Shown: positions 1,831 to 11,053 of the stretch, piece by piece
Numbering within the stretch: the first letter of the stretch is position 1
How the letters are laid out: every line of letters starts with the position of its first letter
Origin: Macrostomum hystrix
Taxonomy: Eukaryota > Animalia > Platyhelminthes
Reading direction: 5' to 3'
Assembly: GCA_950097015.1 (NCBI GenBank)
Contig: CATNEN010000007.1
Location: 10,540,001 to 10,604,000, forward strand
Length of the DNA stretch: 64,000 nt
Notes under the pieces: model-generated
The model's input: only the letters and a program-made list of their open reading frames with translations
Database searches by the model: none
What the model was told of the DNA's origin: nothing
Program-made: the position numbers and the translations under genes

Positions 1831-1986
1831 TGTAAGATTGTTGGCAACATGTTTGCACACGCTATCTACGTTTGCATGCTGTACAATGATGTACATTCAT
1901 TAATCGTTAAAATATAAGCGAGTGAGTTGACGCCTTAAGTGGCGAGAATTTGGTCTACGCTACAATCTCGTTTTCGGCGGCTTACA
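1831..1986 (+). repeat. 5' LTR (156 bp)
   Basis: TGTAAGATTG...GGCGGCTTACA; differs from the 3' LTR by one substitution and a 4-bp indel. Confidence 0.95.
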
Positions 1987-1987
1987 C

Positions 1988-2002
1988 TGGTGACAGCGGT
2001 GG
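1988..2002 (+). promoter_or_regulatory. Primer-binding site, probably tRNA-Leu
   Basis: TGGTGACAGCGGTGG, 1 nt after the LTR; resembles the complement of the eukaryotic tRNA-Leu 3' end (TGGTGGCAGCGGTGG) with one mismatch. Confidence 0.7.
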
Positions 2003-2076
2003 CTGTGAAAAACAGTGAGAGCAGTGCTAGTGCAGAGAGCCCTGCAGTGGCAGTAGCGCAAGCCAGTTTTGTCAAC

Positions 2077-2847
2077 ATGTTTCTGCGACCGCCCCAATAC
2101 CAGTATGGGCAAGATTTTGAGCTCTGGCTGGCGCGTTTCAACAACTTTGCATCGTCCTTTCCGGAGGATCAGCGCAAAAATGCTCTACTGTCATTCCTCG
2201 ACGACAAAGCGTACCAAGCGGCCAGCAATCTGGCAGCTGCCCATTCCTACAGCGATTTTGAAAAGGCTTTGCTCAGTCGTTTCCGGCCATCTGCATCCTC
2301 TGCTGAGCTGCAAGCCCAGTTCTTCAGCCTCACTCAGAAGGACGGGCAGTCGGTTGCAGAGTACTCCGATGCCCTGGTCATCGCGGTGAAGCGCGCTTTT
2401 CCAAGTCTAGAGGAGCCTGCGACTGATGAGCGCAGGATGACGGAAGTGACAGCGAAGGACGAGCTGCTCAAAGGTCGATTTCTTTCTGGATTGAGAAACC
2501 CAGCTGTGCGGATGCAGACGCAGATGCAGCCGAAAGCGACGTTCACTGAGACGGTGGAAACAGCGAAGTTCGTCGAATCAGTGCAGTCACAAGGAGGCGC
2601 CGCCACTGCACTGGCTGCTGAGGCTCCCGAGGCCTTTGCTGTTGGAAATCAGCGGTCTCTGCAGGAGCTGTCGAACAAGCTCAGCCGTCTGGAGTCGAAA
2701 GAACAAAATCGTCGTGGAAGCGGCGACAGACGTGGAGTCGTGACGTGTTGGAGGTGCGGTAAGCCGGGCCACGTTCAAAGATTCTGCTCTCAGAAGTCGG
2801 GAAACTTCAATGGAGCGGCGACCGCCGGGGTGCCGTTCCGCAAGTGA
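2077..2847 (+). CDS. gag: Gypsy Gag with C-terminal CCHC zinc knuckle
   Basis: ATG at 2077; capsid-like LTQKDGQSVAEY and RFLSGLRN motifs; CWRCGKPGHVQRFC knuckle. Confidence 0.9.
   Translation: MFLRPPQYQYGQDFELWLARFNNFASSFPEDQRKNALLSFLDDKAYQAASNLAAAHSYSDFEKALLSRFRPSASSAELQAQFFSLTQKDGQSVAEYSDALVIAVKRAFPSLEEPATDERRMTEVTAKDELLKGRFLSGLRNPAVRMQTQMQPKATFTETVETAKFVESVQSQGGAATALAAEAPEAFAVGNQRSLQELSNKLSRLESKEQNRRGSGDRRGVVTCWRCGKPGHVQRFCSQKSGNFNGAATAGVPFRK
2799..2840 (+). promoter_or_regulatory. Programmed -1 ribosomal frameshift signal (gag to pol)
   Basis: Slippery heptamer G GGA AAC at 2799-2805, followed by a GGAGCGGC...GCCGTTCC stem; the protease ORF is in the -1 frame relative to gag. Confidence 0.75.
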
Positions 2848-3601
2848 GAATCCCGGCGCAGCCAGTCCTGGAGGTGTCCTGCTCAGCCACCGGCGCCAAC
2901 ATGTTGGTGCAGTGCCGCATTCTGCCGATGGGTGTCCCTGCCAGCTGTTTGGTTGACACTGGGTGTTCACAGTCGCTGATGTCGAGTTCCCTGTTTCGTA
3001 AGCTGAATGAGAAACTCCTGCCGTTGGCGACGCCGTGCATCTGAAGCTGGCAGACGGCAACTATTTGGCAGCCTGTGGTTGGCAGGAAGTGCAGCTGAGT
3101 TTCGGTGTTGCGACTGTTCGGCAGGAGGTGTTGATCGTCAACAATCTGGCGAAGGATTTTTTGTTGGGTGCAGATTTCGTGAGAAGTTGTGGCTGCATCA
3201 TCGACTGCAATCGTCAAACGCTCAGTGTGTGCGGTCAGCTAGTAAAAATGGAATCTTCAGCACAAGGGAGTGGTGCATTCGCCGTTGAAGTGGCGGACCG
3301 TACAACTGTACCCGCTGGTCATGAAATCGTGTTTCCTACGAGACTGGCGACTGGATCAGCGACTGCTGTTAATGGTGAGTGCGGAATCTTTGAGCCCGAC
3401 AATTCAAAGGAAATCTCAAATGTCCTGTGTGGAGCGCGCAGCCTATCCGTAATGCGAGGCGGACTCATCGCTGTGCACTATGTCAACATGGATACTAAGC
3501 CTCATACTTTTTACCCCGGAACCAAACTGGGGAGTTTCGAGCCGATGGAGACGGAGTCGCTAATGCAAGTTGAGTCAGTGAAAGACCAAGAAATTGAGCA
3601 T
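2805..3601 (+). pseudogene. pol: Gypsy pol, N-terminal part: aspartic protease plus linker, frameshift near 3035-3044
   Basis: CLVDTGCSQSL active site (ORF 2844..3044) continues in another frame as LADG...FLLGADF (ORF 3035..3604); cut by the LINE insertion at 3601. Confidence 0.88.
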
Positions 3602-3693
3602 TGACTTACTTGACTTAGCTGCAGGGGGCATCTTCCGGATGCAGCGGGGAGGCGTTGCCGCCCATTCCGCTAGCCCCTGGCGACCACGGGCAA

Positions 3694-6600
3694 CTAAAGC
3701 TGCGGTGTCGCGCAGGGGGATCCGGTGGTGCCGGCGTCCGCAGCGCGGTCCTCCTCCGGAGAGTCCAGGAGGTGGAGGGTTGCTCGCCCGGTGGCCCTCA
3801 GGTATCGGACGAGCTGGCAGATGTTCTCAGGCCTGAAAACGTCGGGGAGATCCGGGTTTGGGCCGAGATAGGTAAGCCTGTCCTGAGTGAAGGCGGGGCA
3901 GTCGCAAATAAAATGCTCTGCATCCTCAACATCGGAGAGGCAGAAGGGGCATTCCTCACTGCGGATTTTGCCTTGCAGGAAGCGGTGCCTGGCGAAACAG
4001 CCATGGCCAGAGAGGGCCATGGTAACTGCCCTGATGTCCTTGCGGTTCAGTCCAAGCAAGGCTTTGCGAAGGGCAGTGGAGGGACAAGGGACAGCAGCGC
4101 GAGACTGCCGACAATCGGCGGTATTGATCCATCTGTCCTTGTGCTTTGAGGTCACCCACTGGTTAATCCGAGTGTTGACGACGGCGGTAGGGGTGGAGAC
4201 CGCAGGCACGGGGCCAAAGAGCGAACCCGTCGAACCGGCCTTGGCGAGGCTGTCGGCCAATTCGTTACCAGGGTGGCCAGAGTGCCCTGGAATCCACCTT
4301 AGGGACACCTTGTTGTGGGTCCCTAAGCGGTTGAGTTGCGCGACGCAGTCGAGGACTGTGCGCGAGTAGGTGTGCGTGCGTCCAAGGGCATGGATCGCCG
4401 CCTGGCTGTCCGAGTGGAGGAAGATTTCTGCTCCGTGGACGTTTTTGTTGATCAGCTCCAGGGCGCAGGAGCTGATGGCGAGAACTTTGTTCTGGAAAAC
4501 GGTAGAGTTAATGCCGGTGTGCTGGGAGAAGGTCGCCACAGTTCTCCCTCCGGACATAATGCAGTAGCCGAAACCAGAGACCGAGTTGATTTGCGATCCG
4601 TCGGTGAAGCAGTGAATTTCACGGGGTTGGCCGTGGTCACATACTTCCTGGCGAGGCGGAATGCTGGTTTTGAATTTTTGCGGTGGGCACAGCGTCGACG
4701 GGATTCCGTCTGAGAGAATTTTGAGACTTCCTGCTGTGTCCAGGTCCCGTAGGCTGAGGTCGCCATGGGGCTGGAGGTTCCGCTTGCTGAAGGCAAGTTG
4801 CTTCCGGATGGAGATGCCCGCGTCCAGAAGACGGCGAGCCGTCTTCATCGCTTCCCCCTTGATAAAAAGATCTAAAGGGGGAAGGTCCAGGAAGGCATTC
4901 ATGCCAGCGAAGGGAGTGGAGGGTGCCGCACTCATGATGGCTCGACAAGCACGGCCCTGCACCTTGTTTAGGGCCTCCAGGACCCCTTTGGTCTCCAGGG
5001 CACTATTCCAGATGAAGCCGGCAAAAGAGATGGCCGGTCTAACAATGGTAGTATAAATCCACCAGAGACGGCGGGGGGTGAGGCCCCAGGTGGCGCCGAA
5101 GGCTCTGCGGATCTGCGCGAGCATCGCAAGAGCTTTGCGGGTTTTGAATTTGACGTGAGGTGTCCAGCTCAACCTGTGGTCGAGGATGACACCTAAGCAT
5201 CTGGTTTTCTTTTCCATGGCGATGGGTTTGTCATAGAGAAGGAGAGGCTCAATCCTCCAGTTTCGTTTGCTGGTGAACATAATGGCGACGGTCTTGGACT
5301 CAGAGAGTTTGAGGCCGCAGCTATGAGCCCAGCGCTCGGCACGGTGGATGAAAGCTTGCTAGAGGTCTCTAAGGACCGGGGGAGACGGTCCGGCCACGGT
5401 GGCGGTGACGTCGTCAGCATAGCCGATCTTCTGGACCGGGTCCGGGTCAGGGCTGCAGAGCAGCTCGTCCATGACAAGGTTCCAAAGGATCGGACTGAGA
5501 ACGCCACCCTGCGGGCCTCCCTTCTGGACATTCACAGAACGGGAGTGGCCAAGCAGGTGCGAGGTGGCAGTTCGGTGAGAGATCATATACATGATCCAGC
5601 GGGTGAGGTTCTCGTGCGTAGCCCGGCGTTCCAGGGCTCGCCTAAAGGCTCCGAAAAGCACATTGTCGAAGGCACCATCAATGTCGAGGAAAAGCGAGAG
5701 AGCAAAACCGGTGCCAAGCACGGCGCACAGCTTGTCGACAATGGCATGCAGAGCACTTTCGATGGAACGTCCGGATCGAAAAGCGTGCTGGTTGGCGGAG
5801 AGCGGGGAGTTCCTCAGCTCAACGGGAAGGAGGCGCCAAAGAACAAGCCTTTCAAGCAGCTTAAGAAAGAAGGATGTTAAGCTGATGGGGCGGAAGGCCT
5901 TGGCGGAGTGGTAGTCTCCCTTCCCAGGTTTGGGGATGAAGACGATAGTGGCTTCCTGCCAAGACCTGGGTACGTACCCGAGGGTGATACAGGCCTTGAA
6001 CAGGTTGCAAAGGAGGCCGAGGAACCTGTCATTTTTCACCGCTTCATGTAGGAAGGCGGGGTAAATGTTGTCAGGTCCAGGCGACTTAAAAGGCGAGAAG
6101 GAGTTTGCAGCGCGAGCTGTCCGTTCTCTAGTGATAATAGTTGTCGCAAGGATGTGTCCACCCGGAGTGTGGTCCGGCGGGTCCTGAAGCGGCTCAGTCC
6201 GGGGGAAAGCGCTGGCGAGCATGGCGAGGTCCAGCGATTCGCCAGGATTCTCAGCAAGCCGGCCGTCCGGTCTTTTGATCACTGAGAGCTTCGACATTTT
6301 GTCAAGAGTGAGCGCTTTTACCACGCGAGAAGTTGGGCGGGCGCCCTCCAGCTCGGAGCAGTATTGGCGCCACTTTTCGGACTTCGCTTTCCTGGTGTCA
6401 CGCTTAAAGTCACGAATCGCATTCTGGTAGGCGGTCAGGTCAGCTTGGTCCTTGCTTTTCCGCGCAATCCGCTGGAGGGATTTGGCCTTGCGCCGGAGGG
6501 TTCCAAGCGCTGGGTTCCACCAGGGAGCAGATTTTTTGCCTTTGTAGGCTTTAAGGGGGCAAGAGGTTTCATGAGCTGTCAAGATGGTCATGCTGAGTAA

Positions 6601-7593
6601 ATCAGCCAGATCGTCCACTTCTTGACAGGTGGCAGGAACAACGGATTCTAACTGGTTGGTCTGGCGCTTCACGGATTCCGCAAAGGCCATCCAGTCAGTA
6701 TTCCGGGCGTTCCTTTTCCACAGAATACCAGGCTTGGAGTAGGAGCTTTGCAACCGGAAACGAATGAAGCGATGGTCAGACAGAGATTCCTCTTCGTCCC
6801 ACACCTGCCAGTTTCTGATCAGAGGGATCAGGCCCTGAGAGGCAAGGGTGGCGTCAAGGACCTCCGTCCATCGCCCATTGTCAAAGGTGGGTGTGCCACC
6901 CGAGTTGCAGAACTCAATATTGGTGGTGCAGATGTAGGCAAGGAGATCCTCGCCTCTGCAGTTTGAAGTAACACTGCCCCAGTGGGTGTGGTGGGCATTT
7001 ATGTCGCCTGCCACCAGCAGCTCAAAGTCGCGGTCTGAGCAGTAGTCCACGAGGGAAGTGAGACTGGGCGGAACCGCGGGACCGTCACCAGGAATGTAGA
7101 TAGAGGCGATGATGACGGTGCGGTTCGGGAGAATGTGGTTGGTTTGGATGACACAGAGGTCTTTGTCAGAGAGGTCTGGTCTATACCAAGCTTTGAGATC
7201 GGTAGTCGCGAACACAGCAGCCCTGGGGTTTTGGGGCATGAAATAACAGTCAAAACCTGCAGGAATGTTCGGAATCTTACCTTTCTTCGTCCAGGGCTCT
7301 TGGAGGAGGATGATGCCCGGTTTTTCGAAGTCCACCACACGCGCCAGGTTGGTCGAGGCCGCGATGCAGTGGTGCAGGTTCAGCTGCAGGAAGCTCACCT
7401 CAGGAGGGGCGGTCCGTGCGGCTATCTGCTGGCCTACGGCGAGTTGTTCAGGAGCGATTCCTCGTCCTCGCCGGTGTTTTGCCCGAGCTCCATCGGTTCC
7501 TCCTGAATCGGATCCAGAGCTGAGGCCGGGCTGCCGCAACAGCGGCATCCGTATCCTCAGCCCGGTTTTCCGCCGGGGGTTCCGATGAAACAT
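3694..7593 (-). pseudogene. LINE ORF2: APE endonuclease, reverse transcriptase, RNase H, CCHC knuckle; one in-frame TAG at 5359-5361
   Basis: LQLNLHH, LQEPW, GDINAHH, SDH (APE); KSPGPD, FRPISL, QGGVLSP, YADD (RT); FTDGS, SDSQAA, WIPGH, GNELAD (RNase H); [14 protein letters not shown]. ORFs 5359..7623 and 3694..5280 are the same frame separated by a single stop. The RNase H Glu position reads VFQNKVLAI, which looks mutated. Confidence 0.92.
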
Positions 7594-8926
7594 TGGGCCG
7601 GGTGGTGCTGCGGTGGCGTCCACTGTTGGGGTCCGACAGCTGTCCGGCGCGCTGAGTCAGGCCAGTACGGATGGTGTTGCGGGCGGGTTTCCGGCCCTTA
7701 CCACGTCCGCCTGTCGTTGCGGCTCGCGCGGCTTTGCCCCTGATAGGGTCCGCATCCTCGGAGTGGTCGTGACGACCAGGAGTCTGTGTTCCAGGGCGCA
7801 GGGGCCCGGCAGAGCTCTGGTTCGTCCGTTTCCGCTTTTCCGGGGGCGGCGGGCGAGTGGCGTCGGACTCGAAGCTGAAGATCTGCATTCGAGTGAGGCC
7901 TGCACTGATGTAGGACATTTCTGGGCAGCGGAGCATCCAGCTGTCCGACAATCCTAGGATGGCCGTGAAACCGTCTCCACCAGGTCTGGTGATGGTTTCA
8001 TGAACCACGACACCGTTTGCTGGCAGATCCGGGTGGATTGCCAACAGCAGGCGACGCAGTTCTCCGGCGTTGGTGATGGCGCTGCGAGCTGGGATCCAAA
8101 CACGATGACGGTGTGTCTGGGGGCGCTCGTCCTCCCTGTAGATACACAGGTTGCCCATTTCCGTGCCCCAGTCGAAGGATTTCAGCATCTCGAGGAGTTG
8201 CTGTCCGGACTGGTTGTCGGCAGGCTGGACAATGAGGGCTTGGTCCTGGATGTCGGTCTTCAGGACGTGCAGCACAGTGCCGCTCAGTGCCAGTTTGACC
8301 AGATGGGAGTCCAATCTGCGCCCGATCTGGTCGAGTTGCGCTGTTGAGAGGGGCGTCTCCTGGCCTCGGACAACCAAGGCCGGCTGCCTCTTTGCCATAG
8401 CAGCGTAAGTGCGCTTTGGCTTTGTGGTTTGGCCGGCGCCTCCCGCAGCGGGCCCCCCAGCAGTCGTCGGAGTTTCCGGATGACTGTGAGAGGTTCCGCC
8501 GCGAGAGGAACCGGACTCCCCAGAGGCCTGGGCGGCTCTTTTCCGCGCTTCCGGGTTTCTCGGACGGCGCGAGGAGTCCGCCTCCTTGTTGGGTGCCGGT
8601 TCCTCCGCGATGTTCGCAGAGTTGCCGGCCCCCTCCTCGGAGGCGGTGGTTGGCGCGGATTTCGCAGCCAACCGTACTTCCTGTTTTCGCCGCCGGAATT
8701 CCTGGAGGCGGGCGAAGCTGCGGGCGTGCGTGGAAGGGGAGCGTTTGCTCTTTGATCCAGCCGCTCTGGTGTTTTCCTGAGTGGCGGAGGAGCAGGATGG
8801 ATTTTGGGCGCCGGTGGAACCGGTGTCGCCCTGGCGCTGGTCCTGAGGATCTGCGTCGCCGGCCGGGGTCAGCGTTTCAGCAGGGTCCTGGGACGTGCTG
8901 GAGCTGTAGTTGGACTCCAAAGGTCG
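7448..8926 (-). CDS. LINE ORF1 (basic disordered N-terminus plus a DUF4780-like domain); lacks its own upstream ATG
   Basis: Open frame of ~490 codons; KRTYAAMAK, RVWIP and HPDLP motifs resemble ORF1 proteins of LOA/R1-group elements (from recall, not searched). First in-frame ATG is at 8398. Overlaps the start of ORF2. Confidence 0.8.
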   Translation of the reverse strand, partial: RPLESNYSSSTSQDPAETLTPAGDADPQDQRQGDTGSTGAQNPSCSSATQENTRAAGSKSKRSPSTHARSFARLQEFRRRKQEVRLAAKSAPTTASEEGAGNSANIAEEPAPNKEADSSRRPRNPEARKRAAQASGESGSSRGGTSHSHPETPTTAGGPAAGGAGQTTKPKRTYAAMAKRQPALVVRGQETPLSTAQLDQIGRRLDSHLVKLALSGTVLHVLKTDIQDQALIVQPADNQSGQQLLEMLKSFDWGTEMGNLCIYREDERPQTHRHRVWIPARSAITNAGELRRLLLAIHPDLPANGVVVHETITRPGGDGFTAILGLSDSWMLRCPEMSYISAGLTRMQIFSFESDATRPPPPEKRKRTNQSSAGPLRPGTQTPGRHDHSEDADPIRGKAARAATTGGRGKGRKPARNTIRTGLTQRAGQLSDPNSGRHRSTTRPNVSSEPPAENRAEDTDAAVAAARPQLWIRFRRNRWSSGKTPARTRNRS

Positions 8927-8962
8927 CTGGAAAGAATGAAAGAAAAAATAAAAATAAAAACT
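8927..8962 (-). promoter_or_regulatory. Strong 3' splice acceptor directly in front of LINE ORF1
   Basis: Minus strand AGTTTTTATTTTTATTTTTTCTTTCATTCTTTCCAG|CGACCTTTGGAG: a long polypyrimidine tract plus CAG, in an otherwise GC-rich element. Confidence 0.75.
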
Positions 8963-9052
8963 GCTAATGGCCGGATAGACTCCCCGGACCTTTCAGCCCC
9001 TCAGCGCGGTGAGACCTTAGGCATAAGAGGACACCTAAAGCAGTGCCAGGCC

Positions 9053-9320
9053 CGCAGACTGGCTGCGTACCCTGTTAAGGTCAAAGGGTGACACCTTTCC
9101 CTCAGAGCCGTAGCCAGAGGTACCTGATCACGCACAGGTGCACGAAAGCTGCGGACTGGCCACATACCCTGTTAAGGTCAAAGGGTGACACCCTTCCCTC
9201 AGAGCCGTAGCCAGAGGTACCTGATCACGCACAGGTGCACGAGCGCTGCGGACTGGCCGCATACCCTGTTAAGGTCAAAGGGTGACACCTTTCCCTCCAG
9301 CCGGGGCTAGAGGTACCCAG
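9053..9320 (-). repeat. 97-bp tandem monomers (~2.7 copies) in the LINE 5' region
   Basis: ACTGGC..TACCCTGTTAAGGTCAAAGGGTGACACC recurs at 9058, 9155 and 9252. Confidence 0.9.
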
Positions 9321-9599
9321 TTTGGCCGGAGGCCCTGGATGGGTCATCCAGCGCTGTTGCCCATTCTGTCCGGCTGCCCTAGGGTCAGCCTTGAACACTC
9401 GCGGGACATGTACCCATGGGTCAGCTGACGGGACAGCGTGGAGGGATTCCTGCACCCGAAGGCACAGGGCTCCTTCCTGCCAGGCCTGCTCAAAAAGCGA
9501 CTGCAGGTGTGAGGCATCGCAGACCTTAGCCCGTGGGCCTGGTCTGACTCATACCTCACAAGCGCTGTGTCCCGCCGGTGCGAGCAAGAAATTGAGCAT

Positions 9600-10280
9600 G
9601 GACCCGATGTTGTAGCGCAAGTGCATATCGATGAGAACAATCTGACAGCCAATCAAGCCCGGAGTGTCAAGGACATGCTGCATCAGTACCGGGATGTGTT
9701 CTCAAAGAGTCCGAACGACCTGGGCTGCACTACACTGCTGGACCACAAAATCGACACGGGGTCGGCGCAGCCCATCAGAGTACCTCCTCGGCGGTTATCG
9801 CCTCCGAACCAGCGAGCGGTGTCAGAGATGGTCGAGCAGATGGTGCGAGACGACATCGTAGAGCCGTCGAGTTCTCCATGGTCGAGCCCAGTCATCCTGG
9901 TGAAGAAGAAGGACGGTAGTTTGCGTTTCGTGAACGATTTCAGACTGCTCAACTCTGTGACCGTGAAGGACAGTCATCCACTGCCTCACACCAGCGATCT
10001 GATCGACGCCTTGGAGGGATCCACGATGTTTTCGACGCTAGATTTCACCAGCGGCTACTCTCAGGTGATGTTGGACTCGCAGAGTCGTGAAAAAACTGCA
10101 TTTCCTGCGCCACAGGGATTGTTCCAGTACAAGAGGCTGCCTCAAGGAGTCTGCAACGGGCCTGCCACATTCTCGAGACTGATGGAACTCGTGCTGAAGG
10201 GTCTTCGATGGGAAGTATGTCTATCATTTCTCGATGACGTAGTCATATTTTCGAAAGGATTCGAGGAGCATCTTCGTTGA
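9600..10280 (+). pseudogene. pol: Gypsy pol reverse transcriptase, truncated after the catalytic motif
   Basis: PWSSPVILVKKKDGSLRF, FSTLDFTSGYSQV, KTAF, LPQGVCNGPATF, FLDDVVIF, then an abrupt break. Confidence 0.92.
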
Positions 10281-10827
10281 CGTATGCAGACGCATGCAGA
10301 CGTCGCACGAGAGGGCGAGGCAAAGCCTGGAGACAGCGCAGCTGCACCAGAAGGTGGAGTACGACAAGCGGTGCCACGGCGAAGCTTTCAGCGAGGTCTG
10401 GCTACACAATCCAGCACTCAAGCAAGGTGAGTGCCGCAAATTTCACCGCTGGTGGACTGGGCCATGGCGTATTAAAAAGAAAATTTCCTTCAATCGCCTG
10501 AAGTCCTGCAAGGCGGCCTGTCCAGTCGGCGCCCCAGTCGGCGCCCCGGTCGGCGCTCCAGTCGGCGCCCCAGTTGGCGCTCCAGTCGGCGCCCCAGTCG
10601 GCGCCCCAGTTGGCGCCCCAGTCGGCGCCCCAGTCGGCGCCCCAGTCGGCGCCCCAGTCGGCGCTCCAGTCGGCGCTCCAGTCGGCGCCCCAGTCGGCGC
10701 TCCAGTCGGCGCTCCAGTCGGCGCCCCAGCCGGCGCCCCAGCCGGCGCTCCTATCGTTGTCGAATTGCGTCGCATTGAAAGGACCCGTGCTCCTCCAGAG
10801 TTTTTCGGTGAAGTTTATACCCATTGA
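10281..10827 (+). pseudogene. C-terminal remnant of Gypsy integrase (GPY/F region); RNase H and integrase core deleted
   Basis: ARQSL..AQLHQKVEYDK...VWLHNP...KFHRWWTGPWRI and FNRLK directly follow the RT. Confidence 0.75.
10522..10751. repeat. 12-bp minisatellite (~19 copies), in frame as PVGA repeats
   Basis: Unit CCAGTCGGCGC(C/T). Confidence 0.97.
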
Positions 10828-11053
10828 AAAAGATGTTTGATTTGAAATGTTTGAAATAATGTTTGAAAACTGTCAGATCAGTTTAAATTGAATTTTTTGT
10901 GCTTTTTTTATATACATTTTTTATTCCATTGAGTTACTGTTGCAACAATAATTTAAATATTTTATTTTTCAAAATAACTCGTTTTTTATATTAAATAATA
11001 AGCTCGAATATTGTAAAAGTGAGTGGAACACTTTTTTCGCGAAAGGAGAGCAT

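What the first reader, a model, noticed from the sequence alone, without database searches (positions are those of the whole stretch)
8398..9584. LINE ORF1 has no start codon but sits exactly in frame for the AUG donated by flatworm spliced-leader trans-splicing
Seen: ORF1 is closed upstream by TGA (8995-8993), and I find no ATG in any frame between 8926 and 8399. A strong acceptor (T-tract...TTTCCAG) ends at 8927, and the next bases read CGA CCT TTG GAG TCC in the ORF1 frame. The conserved-looking KRTYA motif lies upstream of the first Met, suggesting the upstream codons are translated. Known: flatworm SL exons end in AUG, which can serve as the initiator. Inference: SL-AUG|CGA CCT TTG gives M-R-P-L-E-S..., so the element may rely on host trans-splicing for its cap and start codon, with the ~660-nt 5' region acting as an outron. 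This copy retains that region up to the TSD, so unspliced RNA was the retrotransposition template. Splicing would then divide transcripts into mRNA and genome. Caveats: the in-frame position has a 1-in-3 chance probability, the host identity is inferred, and cis-splicing (e.g. donor GAG|GTATGA near 9555) or initiation at 8398 are alternatives.
Basis: partly seen in the sequence, partly recalled or inferred. Interest (0 to 1): 0.92.

Follow-up and report, generated by a model that had tools for sequence, protein, structure and literature searches.

The report
Decayed LINE copy with mutated start codon
This flatworm jumping gene does have its own start codon: 33 of 34 copies in the genome carry ATG where this worn-out copy has a one-letter change, so it does not need a start codon donated by trans-splicing, although a conserved splice-acceptor-like signal just upstream remains untested.

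Summary
There is no ATG in any frame from 9024 to 8398. TGA closes the frame at 8995-8993. A strong pyrimidine tract plus CAG ends at 8927, in phase with ORF1.

In the same genome (Macrostomum hystrix), 33 of 34 copies read CGACCT-ATG-GAGTCC where the window reads TTG (8920-8918). That Met is kept in homologues from M. lignano and from an unidentified source. Most sampled copies have an intact 495-codon ORF1 starting at it.

The window copy is decayed:
- a start-codon change;
- a 1-nt deletion near the end of ORF1;
- a premature TAG in ORF2.

Some points stay open. The host spliced leader (SL) does end in ATG. The acceptor-like site is the strongest on its strand in 64 kb. A comparable signal lies 2-15 nt before the ORF1 ATG in three other LINE families (34-42% ORF1 identity). 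The leader carries 7-14 upstream ATGs. SL trans-splicing that removes the leader is therefore plausible (about 0.35-0.4).

No SL-headed or spliced genomic copy was found. Other first readers of this scan noted similar acceptors before LINE ORF1 elsewhere in this genome.

The parts
9585..9599 (-). Upstream copy of the 15-bp target-site duplication ATGCTCAATTTCTTG
   Evidence: Exact match to 3601-3587; read
3602..9584 (-). 5'-complete but decayed LINE copy (about 5,983 nt): leader, ORF1, ORF2 (APE-RT-RNase H), 3' end ...AAGTCAAGTAAGTCA
   Evidence: Pfam Exo_endo_phos_2, RVT_1 and RNase_H; TSD; at least 34 related copies in the genome
9318..9584 (-). Head of the 5' leader. All full-length copies start CTCGCACCGGCGGG. 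Weak donor-like GTGAG/GTATGA at element nt 26-36
   Evidence: identical 5' termini next to different flanks; GT[AG]AG is lost in the major subfamily
9057..9317 (-). 2.7 tandem 97-bp monomers of the leader. Copy number varies between copies (leader 561-1148 nt)
   Evidence: Tandem Repeats Finder. The module is shared with three other LINE families
8927..8960 (-). Pyrimidine tract (8960-8930) plus CAG (8929-8927): 3' splice-site-like signal, matching the published Macrostomum trans-splice acceptor motif [T/C]TNCAG
   Evidence: motif from PMC8629364. Present in 33 of the 34 copies (one reads AAG)
8918..8920 (-). Position of the family's ORF1 start codon. This copy reads TTG; 33 other copies read ATG
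   Evidence: The Met is aligned with P0001 and M. lignano P0003
7448..8920 (-). ORF1 of this copy (490 codons as read). A 1-nt deletion in the C-run at 7530-7528 shifts the last ~30 codons relative to the 495-codon ORF1 of other copies
   Evidence: No Pfam family; weak DUF4780 lead
8396..8398 (-). First ATG of this copy in the ORF1 frame (codon 175 of the family ORF1). Not conserved as Met in homologues
   Evidence: alignment (Ile in P0001, Lys in P0004)
3694..7593 (-). ORF2 (APE, RT, RNase H, C-terminal Cys/His motif), interrupted by an in-frame TAG at 5361-5359 where M. lignano P0002 has Leu
1939..3601 (+). Gag (Retrotrans_gag, zinc knuckle) and the following ORF of the LTR-type retroelement into which the LINE inserted
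   Evidence: ORFs
9567..10280 (+). RT part of the same host LTR-type retroelement, continuing after the LINE insertion
   Evidence: Pfam RVT_1

Best explanation
Window 9584-3602 (minus strand) is a dead, 5'-complete copy of a young multi-copy LINE (APE-RT-RNase H) of Macrostomum hystrix. It is inserted with a 15-bp TSD into an LTR-type retroelement.

The family's ORF1 starts at its own ATG, at the position of window 8920-8918, 6 nt after a pyrimidine tract plus CAG. This copy carries a private one-base difference there (TTG). It also has a 1-nt deletion near the ORF1 end and a premature TAG in ORF2. The 'missing start codon' is therefore decay of one copy, not a design feature, and no donated AUG is needed. 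This much is shown.

The following is inferred only. The conserved acceptor-like signal in front of ORF1 probably serves to give ribosomes access to ORF1 despite a 0.56-1.15-kb leader with 7-14 upstream ATGs. The likeliest route is SL trans-splicing of part of the transcripts (about 0.35-0.4). The unspliced RNA that starts at element nt 1 is the retrotransposition template.
For: - Start codon in the family: 29 of 29 further copies in the first alignment and 33 of 34 copies genome-wide read CGACCTATGGAGTC. Only the window copy reads TTG.
- Intact copies: 19 of 30 sampled copies have an uninterrupted ORF1 starting M-E-S, 18 of them with 495 codons.
- Conservation of the Met: P0001 (46% identity over 451 aligned residues) reads QRPMSS, and M. 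lignano models read [Q/K]RLMEYS.
- Other lesions in this copy.
- Host identity: assembly size, contig number, N50 and longest contig equal those published for M. hystrix.
- Host SL: the 3' end ...TTGCATG occurs exactly at 31 sites, including ~11.7-kb arrays and a gene with SL|GTAAG.
- Acceptor-like site: strongest on its strand. Comparable sites lie 15, 2 and 6 nt before the ORF1 ATG in three families with 34-42% ORF1 identity.
- Leader: 7-14 uATGs, and no GT[AG]AG donor motif in the major subfamily.
Against: Nothing contradicts the point about the start codon.

Against the inferred use of the acceptor:
- There is no RNA evidence.
- None of the 34 copies that reach the ORF1 start begins with SL or lacks the leader. 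If the translated RNA were also the preferred template (cis-preference), SL-headed copies would be expected. SL-headed retrocopies of other RNAs do exist in this genome.
- All upstream ORFs end before the ORF1 ATG, so reinitiation on unspliced RNA is possible.
- In family B the site is out of phase with an SL AUG.
Confidence: 0.93

Rival explanations
1. One reading: the family has no initiator of its own and takes its AUG (and cap) from the spliced leader, giving M-R-P-L-E-S...
For: The SL of this host ends in ATG. The acceptor is in phase with no stop in between. SL AUGs can initiate translation in flatworms (Cheng et al. 2006, cited in PMC5832876 and PMC12582326).
Against: 33 of 34 copies have their own in-frame ATG two codons downstream of the acceptor. 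The Met is conserved in relatives. The TTG copy is otherwise broken.
Confidence: 0.02
2. The acceptor is real and is used for SL trans-splicing. This strips the uATG-rich leader (outron) and gives the mRNA a short SL leader. The SL AUG then lies in frame two codons before the element's own AUG and may add M-R-P. Unspliced RNA is the template for new copies.
For: - The site matches the [T/C]TNCAG motif of Macrostomum trans-splice acceptors with an 18-20/20 pyrimidine tract.
- 20-30% of Macrostomum genes are trans-spliced.
- An unpaired acceptor is said to suffice for trans-splicing (Conrad et al. 1993, as cited in PMC8629364).
- The major subfamily has no GT[AG]AG in its leader, and it gained a further uATG at nt 20.
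- The signal is kept in four LINE families.
- Two M. lignano gene models differ upstream exactly from the codon after the site, and what precedes it is not a pyrimidine-tract translation.
- SL-bearing retrotransposon RNAs or loci are reported in other flatworms.
Against: No RNA data are available. There are 0 SL-headed copies among the 34 copies, and none among 26 sampled dispersed SL copies. Family B would get an overlapping 13-codon uORF from the SL AUG. The phase count across the four M. hystrix families (3 of 4 in phase) is not significant.
Confidence: 0.37
3. The pyrimidine tract is not a splice signal. It is instead a translation or transcription element on the unspliced RNA: an IRES-like Yn-Xm-AUG / PTB-type tract, a site for reinitiation after short uORFs, or a TCT-type initiator for a downstream start site.
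For: Every copy that reaches ORF1 keeps the leader, as expected if the leader-bearing RNA is both translated and copied. All uORFs end before the ORF1 ATG. One copy begins 35 nt upstream of the CAG (L048). IRES activity upstream of ORF1 is reported for mouse L1 (own knowledge, not checked here).
Against: The terminal CAG is kept in 33 of the 34 copies (one reads AAG) and in all four families, which none of these alternative models requires. 13 uATGs are a heavy burden for scanning or reinitiation.
Confidence: 0.25
4. A cis-spliced 5'-UTR intron: a donor near element nt 30 (G|GTATGA, conserved; GTGAG in older subfamilies) is joined to the acceptor at 8927, removing the monomers.
For: GGTATGAGTCAG is conserved in all copies. 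In older subfamilies all uATGs lie between this donor and the acceptor.
Against: GTATGA departs from the Macrostomum donor motif GT[G/A]AG. The major subfamily has lost GTGAG and gained an out-of-frame ATG at nt 20, inside the would-be first exon. No intron-less copy was seen among the copies aligned.
Confidence: 0.08

Closest known systems
Flatworm mRNAs that use the 3'-terminal AUG of the spliced leader as initiator (Cheng, Cohen, Ndegwa & Davis 2006, J Biol Chem; cited in PMC5832876 and PMC12582326)
   Same: The host SL ends in AUG. The acceptor-like site is in phase with the ORF, with no stop in between.
   Different: The element has its own conserved AUG two codons downstream, so it does not depend on the SL AUG. 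No SL junction has been shown.
C. elegans Cer1 (Ty3/gypsy): an SL1 trans-spliced, spliced 2.4-kb mRNA versus an unspliced 8-kb genomic RNA (PMC3315495)
   Same: A retroelement whose RNA carries host splice and trans-splice signals that must be skipped to make the copying template.
   Different: Cer1 is an LTR element and its junctions were sequenced. Here the element is a LINE and use of the site is only inferred.
SL-bearing retrotransposon transcripts or loci in parasitic flatworms (S. mansoni, PMC5832876; 597 LTR/LINE-associated partial-SL loci, PMC12582326)
   Same: The idea that flatworm retrotransposon RNAs receive the SL.
   Different: Those reports rest on SL fossils or reads inside elements. 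For this family no SL fossil was found.
Mouse L1 with a tandem-monomer 5' UTR; trypanosomatid Pr77 shared by L1Tc/ingi/NARTc (PMC1874656, PMC8190864)
   Same: A leader built of tandem monomers with variable copy number. One 5' module is shared by different retroposon families.
   Different: Promoter activity is untested here. The sharing is between LINE families whose ORF1 proteins are only 34-42% identical, whereas the module is 87-96% identical.
RNase-H-bearing LINE clades (I / LOA / R1-type, 'I superfamily')
   Same: Domain order APE-RT-RNase H, a C-terminal Cys/His motif, a short-repeat 3' end, TSDs and 5'-truncated copies.
   Different: The clade was not resolved by phylogeny. ORF1 has no zinc knuckles and no Pfam family, only a weak DUF4780 lead.

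Membership tests
mRNA initiated at the SL-donated AUG | The host spliced leader ends in AUG | tested here: met
   The 21-nt SL 3' end taken from PMC8629364 occurs exactly 31 times, including ~11.7-kb arrays and a gene with SL|GTAAG. The M. hystrix SL is reported as conserved, with a final ATG.
mRNA initiated at the SL-donated AUG | The ORF has no initiator AUG of its own at its 5' end | tested here: not met
   33 of 34 copies have ATG at window 8920-8918. The Met is conserved in P0001, P0002 and P0003.
mRNA initiated at the SL-donated AUG | The acceptor is in phase with the ORF and no stop lies between | tested here: met
   CAG|CGA CCT ATG: 6 nt. The chance of this phase is 1 in 3.
mRNA initiated at the SL-donated AUG | The SL is joined to the exon in RNA | not testable with these tools
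SL trans-spliced transcript (outron plus acceptor) | A 3' splice site of the species' type ([T/C]TNCAG after a pyrimidine tract) near the 5' end of the coding exon | tested here: met
   TTCCAG with 18-20 of 20 pyrimidines upstream. It is the strongest such site on its strand in 64 kb. Motif.
SL trans-spliced transcript (outron plus acceptor) | No matching donor upstream in cis | tested here: inconclusive
   The major subfamily has no GT[AG]AG in about 1,050 nt. Older copies have one at nt 26, and a conserved weaker GTATGA is present in all copies.
SL trans-spliced transcript (outron plus acceptor) | Genomic fossils: SL-headed retrocopies joined at the acceptor | tested here: not met
   The junction pattern searches found none. 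The single 3-mismatch hit has no SL and no LINE next to it. 26 sampled SL copies are followed by other sequences. Absence of fossils does not exclude splicing.
LINE (non-LTR retrotransposon) with RNase H | APE, RT and RNase H domains in one ORF2 | tested here: met
   Pfam Exo_endo_phos_2 1.2e-17, RVT_1 8e-25, RNase_H 8.2e-12.
LINE (non-LTR retrotransposon) with RNase H | Target-site duplication, a defined 5' terminus, 5'-truncated copies, many dispersed copies | tested here: met
   A 15-bp TSD. Identical 5' termini next to unrelated flanks. Truncated copies and 85 genomic matches.
Monomer-type LINE 5' UTR (as in mouse L1) | Tandem monomers with variable copy number upstream of a non-repeated tether and ORF1 | tested here: met
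   97-bp unit, 2.7 copies here. Leader length is 561-1148 nt among copies.
Monomer-type LINE 5' UTR (as in mouse L1) | The monomers have promoter activity | not testable with these tools
   Needs reporter assays or mapping of 5' ends.

The most novel reading that the evidence does not exclude
A clade of LINEs in Macrostomum keeps a host-type trans-splice acceptor a few bases before ORF1. Part of the element's RNA would be SL trans-spliced into a short-leader, TMG-capped mRNA for ORF1/ORF2, with the SL AUG in frame in this family. The unspliced, monomer-bearing RNA would be the only retrotransposition template. That would separate 'mRNA' from 'genome' in a LINE and would imply trans-complementation instead of strict cis-preference.
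Probability: 0.35. Interest if true: 0.65.

Novelty: new member of a known kind. Interest (0 to 1): 0.3.

Why it matters
As submitted, the finding would have been the first retrotransposon that depends on its host for a start codon. That is not the case, and showing it removes a false lead.

Two things remain of value.

1. Several co-resident LINE families of M. hystrix keep a strong 3' splice-site-like signal directly before ORF1, behind a long leader rich in upstream ATGs. The organism trans-splices 20-30% of its genes. Public RNA-seq and Iso-Seq data could decide quickly whether LINE mRNAs are trans-spliced. That would bear on how LINEs separate translation from copying.

2. The same monomeric 5' module is shared at about 87-96% identity by LINE families whose ORF1 proteins are only 34-42% identical. 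This points to recent exchange of promoter modules between families.

Tried and rejected
- SL|ORF1 fossils: a junction 21-mer with up to 3 mismatches gave only family copies with the normal tract, plus one chance hit (L047) with neither SL nor LINE homology. A gapped SL-tail ... ATGGAGTCC pattern gave nothing.
- What follows dispersed SL copies (26 of about 121 sampled): one true SL RNA gene, and otherwise other repeats or retrocopies. None is this LINE clade.
- Cis-intron idea (donor near nt 30): weakened by the major subfamily, which has lost the GTGAG and gained an ATG at nt 20.
- ATG desert downstream of the start codon as a sign of leaky scanning to Met175: rejected. Met175 is not conserved in homologues and the desert is only mildly unusual (P about 0.015, T-poor sequence).
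- Phase conservation as a test: 6, 15 and 6 nt are in phase and 2 nt is out of phase, in four M. hystrix families (P about 0.11). This is not informative.
- Pfam on ORF1: no family. The protein atlas and a homologue give only a weak DUF4780 lead.
- The protein database holds no M. hystrix copy of this ORF1, so SL-derived N-termini could not be looked for.
- The alignment tools print a consensus line by themselves.
Full report
**What is at the coordinates**

Read on the minus strand, window 9584-3602 is a 5'-complete LINE copy. It is flanked by an exact 15-bp target-site duplication, ATGCTCAATTTCTTG, at 9599-9585 and 3601-3587.
- ORF2 carries endonuclease, reverse transcriptase and RNase H domains.
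- ORF1 has no Pfam family. It has a weak DUF4780 lead.
- The copy sits inside an LTR-type retroelement on the plus strand. Gag and a zinc knuckle lie at 1939-2847, and the RT resumes at 9567-10280.

- In the ORF1 frame there are stops at 9037, 9019 and 8995.
- There is no ATG in any frame between 9024 and 8398.
- The first in-frame ATG is at 8398.
- A pyrimidine-rich tract (8960-8930) ends in CAG (8929-8927) and is followed in frame by CGA CCT TTG GAG TCC.
- The ATG-free stretch alone is only mildly unusual. 1.5% of mononucleotide shuffles have none, and the stretch has 11.5% T.
- The acceptor-like site is clearly non-random. It is the only [T/C]TNCAG with at least 18 of 20 upstream pyrimidines on that strand of the whole window.

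**The decisive comparison**

The genome holds many copies of this family at 89-98% identity. In an alignment of 30 copies, all 29 others read CGACCTATGGAGTC where the window reads CGACCTTTGGAGTC. A genome-wide pattern search found 34 copies that contain this 32-mer with up to 3 mismatches. Of these, 33 have ATG, and the only TTG is the window copy. Among the 30 sampled copies, 19 have an uninterrupted ORF1 that starts M-E-S at this ATG, and 18 of those have 495 codons.

The Met is also kept outside the family:
- A 525-aa homologue of unknown source (P0001; 46% identity over 451 aligned residues) reads ...QRPMSS...
- Two M. lignano models (P0002, P0003) read ...[K/Q]RLMEYS...
- Homology runs from this Met through the whole N-terminal part.

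The family therefore has its own conserved start codon, two codons after the CAG.

**The window copy is decayed**

- The start-codon base differs at 8920.
- One base is missing from a C-run at 7530-7528. This shifts the last ~30 codons of ORF1.
- ORF2 has an in-frame TAG at 5361-5359, where M. lignano P0002 has Leu.

**Host and spliced leader**

G000 has 220,453,370 bases in 42 contigs. The window's own contig is 13,505,968 bases and the longest contig is 35,345,953 bases. These are the total length, contig number, N50 and longest-contig figures published for Macrostomum hystrix (PMC10468722).

The 3' 21 nt of the M. lignano SL (PMC8629364) occur exactly 31 times. These include arrays with about 11.7-kb spacing and one gene with SL|GTAAG. 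The authors of the assembly also state that the SL is conserved and probably includes the final ATG.

**What remains of the idea**

The acceptor-like signal looks maintained:
- It is present in 33 of the 34 copies; one copy reads AAG.
- It matches the published Macrostomum trans-splice acceptor motif.
- Three other LINE families of the same genome, with ORF1 proteins only 34-42% identical to this one, each have a pyrimidine tract plus YTNCAG just before the ORF1 ATG. The distances are 15 nt (17-18 of 20 pyrimidines), 2 nt (15 of 20) and 6 nt (13 of 20).
- For comparison, the chance of a site with at least 15 of 20 pyrimidines falling in a given 20-nt span is about 0.9%.

The leader also argues against simple scanning:
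- All full-length copies start at the same base.
- Leaders are 561-1148 nt long because the number of 97-bp monomers varies.
- They hold 7-14 upstream ATGs.
- The most numerous subfamily has the longest leader, has gained another ATG at nt 20, and has no GT[AG]AG donor motif.

In an animal that trans-splices 20-30% of its genes, an unpaired strong acceptor is a reasonable candidate for SL addition. In this family the SL AUG would then lie in frame, giving M-R-P-M-E-S.

**Evidence against, or neutral**

- No genomic copy starts with the SL at this junction, and none lacks the leader. All 34 copies that reach the ORF1 start continue into the leader. SL-headed retrocopies of other RNAs do exist in this genome. 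None of 26 sampled SL copies is followed by this LINE clade. With strict cis-preference this argues that the leader-bearing RNA is the translated one. Without cis-preference it says little.
- All upstream ORFs end before the ORF1 ATG, so reinitiation or an IRES-like role of the tract is possible.
- In family B an SL AUG would open a 13-codon upstream ORF that overlaps the start.
- The phase count (3 of 4 M. hystrix families in phase) is not significant.
- Two M. lignano gene models diverge upstream exactly at the codon after the site, and what precedes it does not look like a translated pyrimidine tract. This hints that the site is used as an acceptor there. These are gene models whose evidence I could not inspect.

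**What could not be done**

No RNA evidence was therefore obtained.

The consensus lines printed by the alignment tools were not used.

**Comparison with the literature**

- Use of the flatworm SL AUG as an initiator is established (Cheng et al. 2006, cited).
- SL-bearing retrotransposon transcripts or SL fossils in LTR and LINE elements are reported for parasitic flatworms (PMC5832876, PMC12582326).
- C. elegans Cer1 makes an SL1 trans-spliced subgenomic mRNA beside an unspliced genomic RNA (PMC3315495).

A trans-spliced LINE mRNA would be a new case of a known theme, not a new kind. Other first readers of this scan noted similar acceptors before LINE ORF1 elsewhere in this genome (s1-842852, s1-300549). 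Those notes have not been followed up.

**Verdict**

- The sequence observation is confirmed.
- The headline interpretation (no start codon, SL-donated AUG) is refuted: it is a private lesion of a dead copy.
- Use of the conserved acceptor-like site is an open question, testable with public M. hystrix RNA data. I put SL trans-splicing at about 0.35-0.4.
- Interest is 0.3.

Noticed in passing
window 9584-9050 (minus strand); L053-L060: The 5' module of this LINE consists of the head CTCGCACCGG... plus the 97-bp monomers. At least three other LINE families of the same genome share it at about 87-96% nucleotide identity, although their ORF1 proteins are only 34-42% identical to this one. In two families the homology stops right after the last monomer (about 9050-9022). 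In the third it runs to about 8934. This looks like recent exchange of a promoter module between co-resident LINE families.
   Followed up: partly
L056 (G000:C38:11465000-11466000) and relatives: In family B the repeat unit is 96 nt, and the reading frame stays open from an ATG in the first monomer through the monomers and tether into ORF1 (open frame up to 732 aa). This may be chance in GC-rich sequence, or an N-terminally extended ORF1.
   Followed up: no
L042-L046, L061-L080 (dispersed SL copies): About 121 SL-like 21-mers (up to 2 mismatches) are scattered in the genome. Many head recurrent non-coding repeat families; for example, SL followed by (G/A)CTTCAACTCGCTTCGCTTC... occurs in several loci. 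These look like retrocopies of trans-spliced RNAs or SL-derived retroposons. L041 is a bona fide SL RNA gene outside the ~11.7-kb arrays.
   Followed up: partly
window 10294-10840: A long (GAPV)n-type tandem repeat, about 20 units of 12 nt, is open in several frames on both strands just downstream of the interrupted LTR-element pol.
   Followed up: no
P0002, P0003 (M. lignano UniRef models): Both models fuse unrelated upstream sequence to this LINE ORF1 exactly at the codon after the acceptor-like site. One upstream part is a BTG/anti-proliferative domain. The other is the antisense of a LINE 3' end. They are chimeric transcripts or annotation artefacts.
   Followed up: no
L052 (G000:C39:14936500-14939000); G000:C38:3697044-3698045: Two copies carry large internal deletions, equivalent to window 8731-6750 and 8895-8615. 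Neither deletion ends at the acceptor-like site, so they are not spliced retrocopies of the kind looked for.
   Followed up: partly
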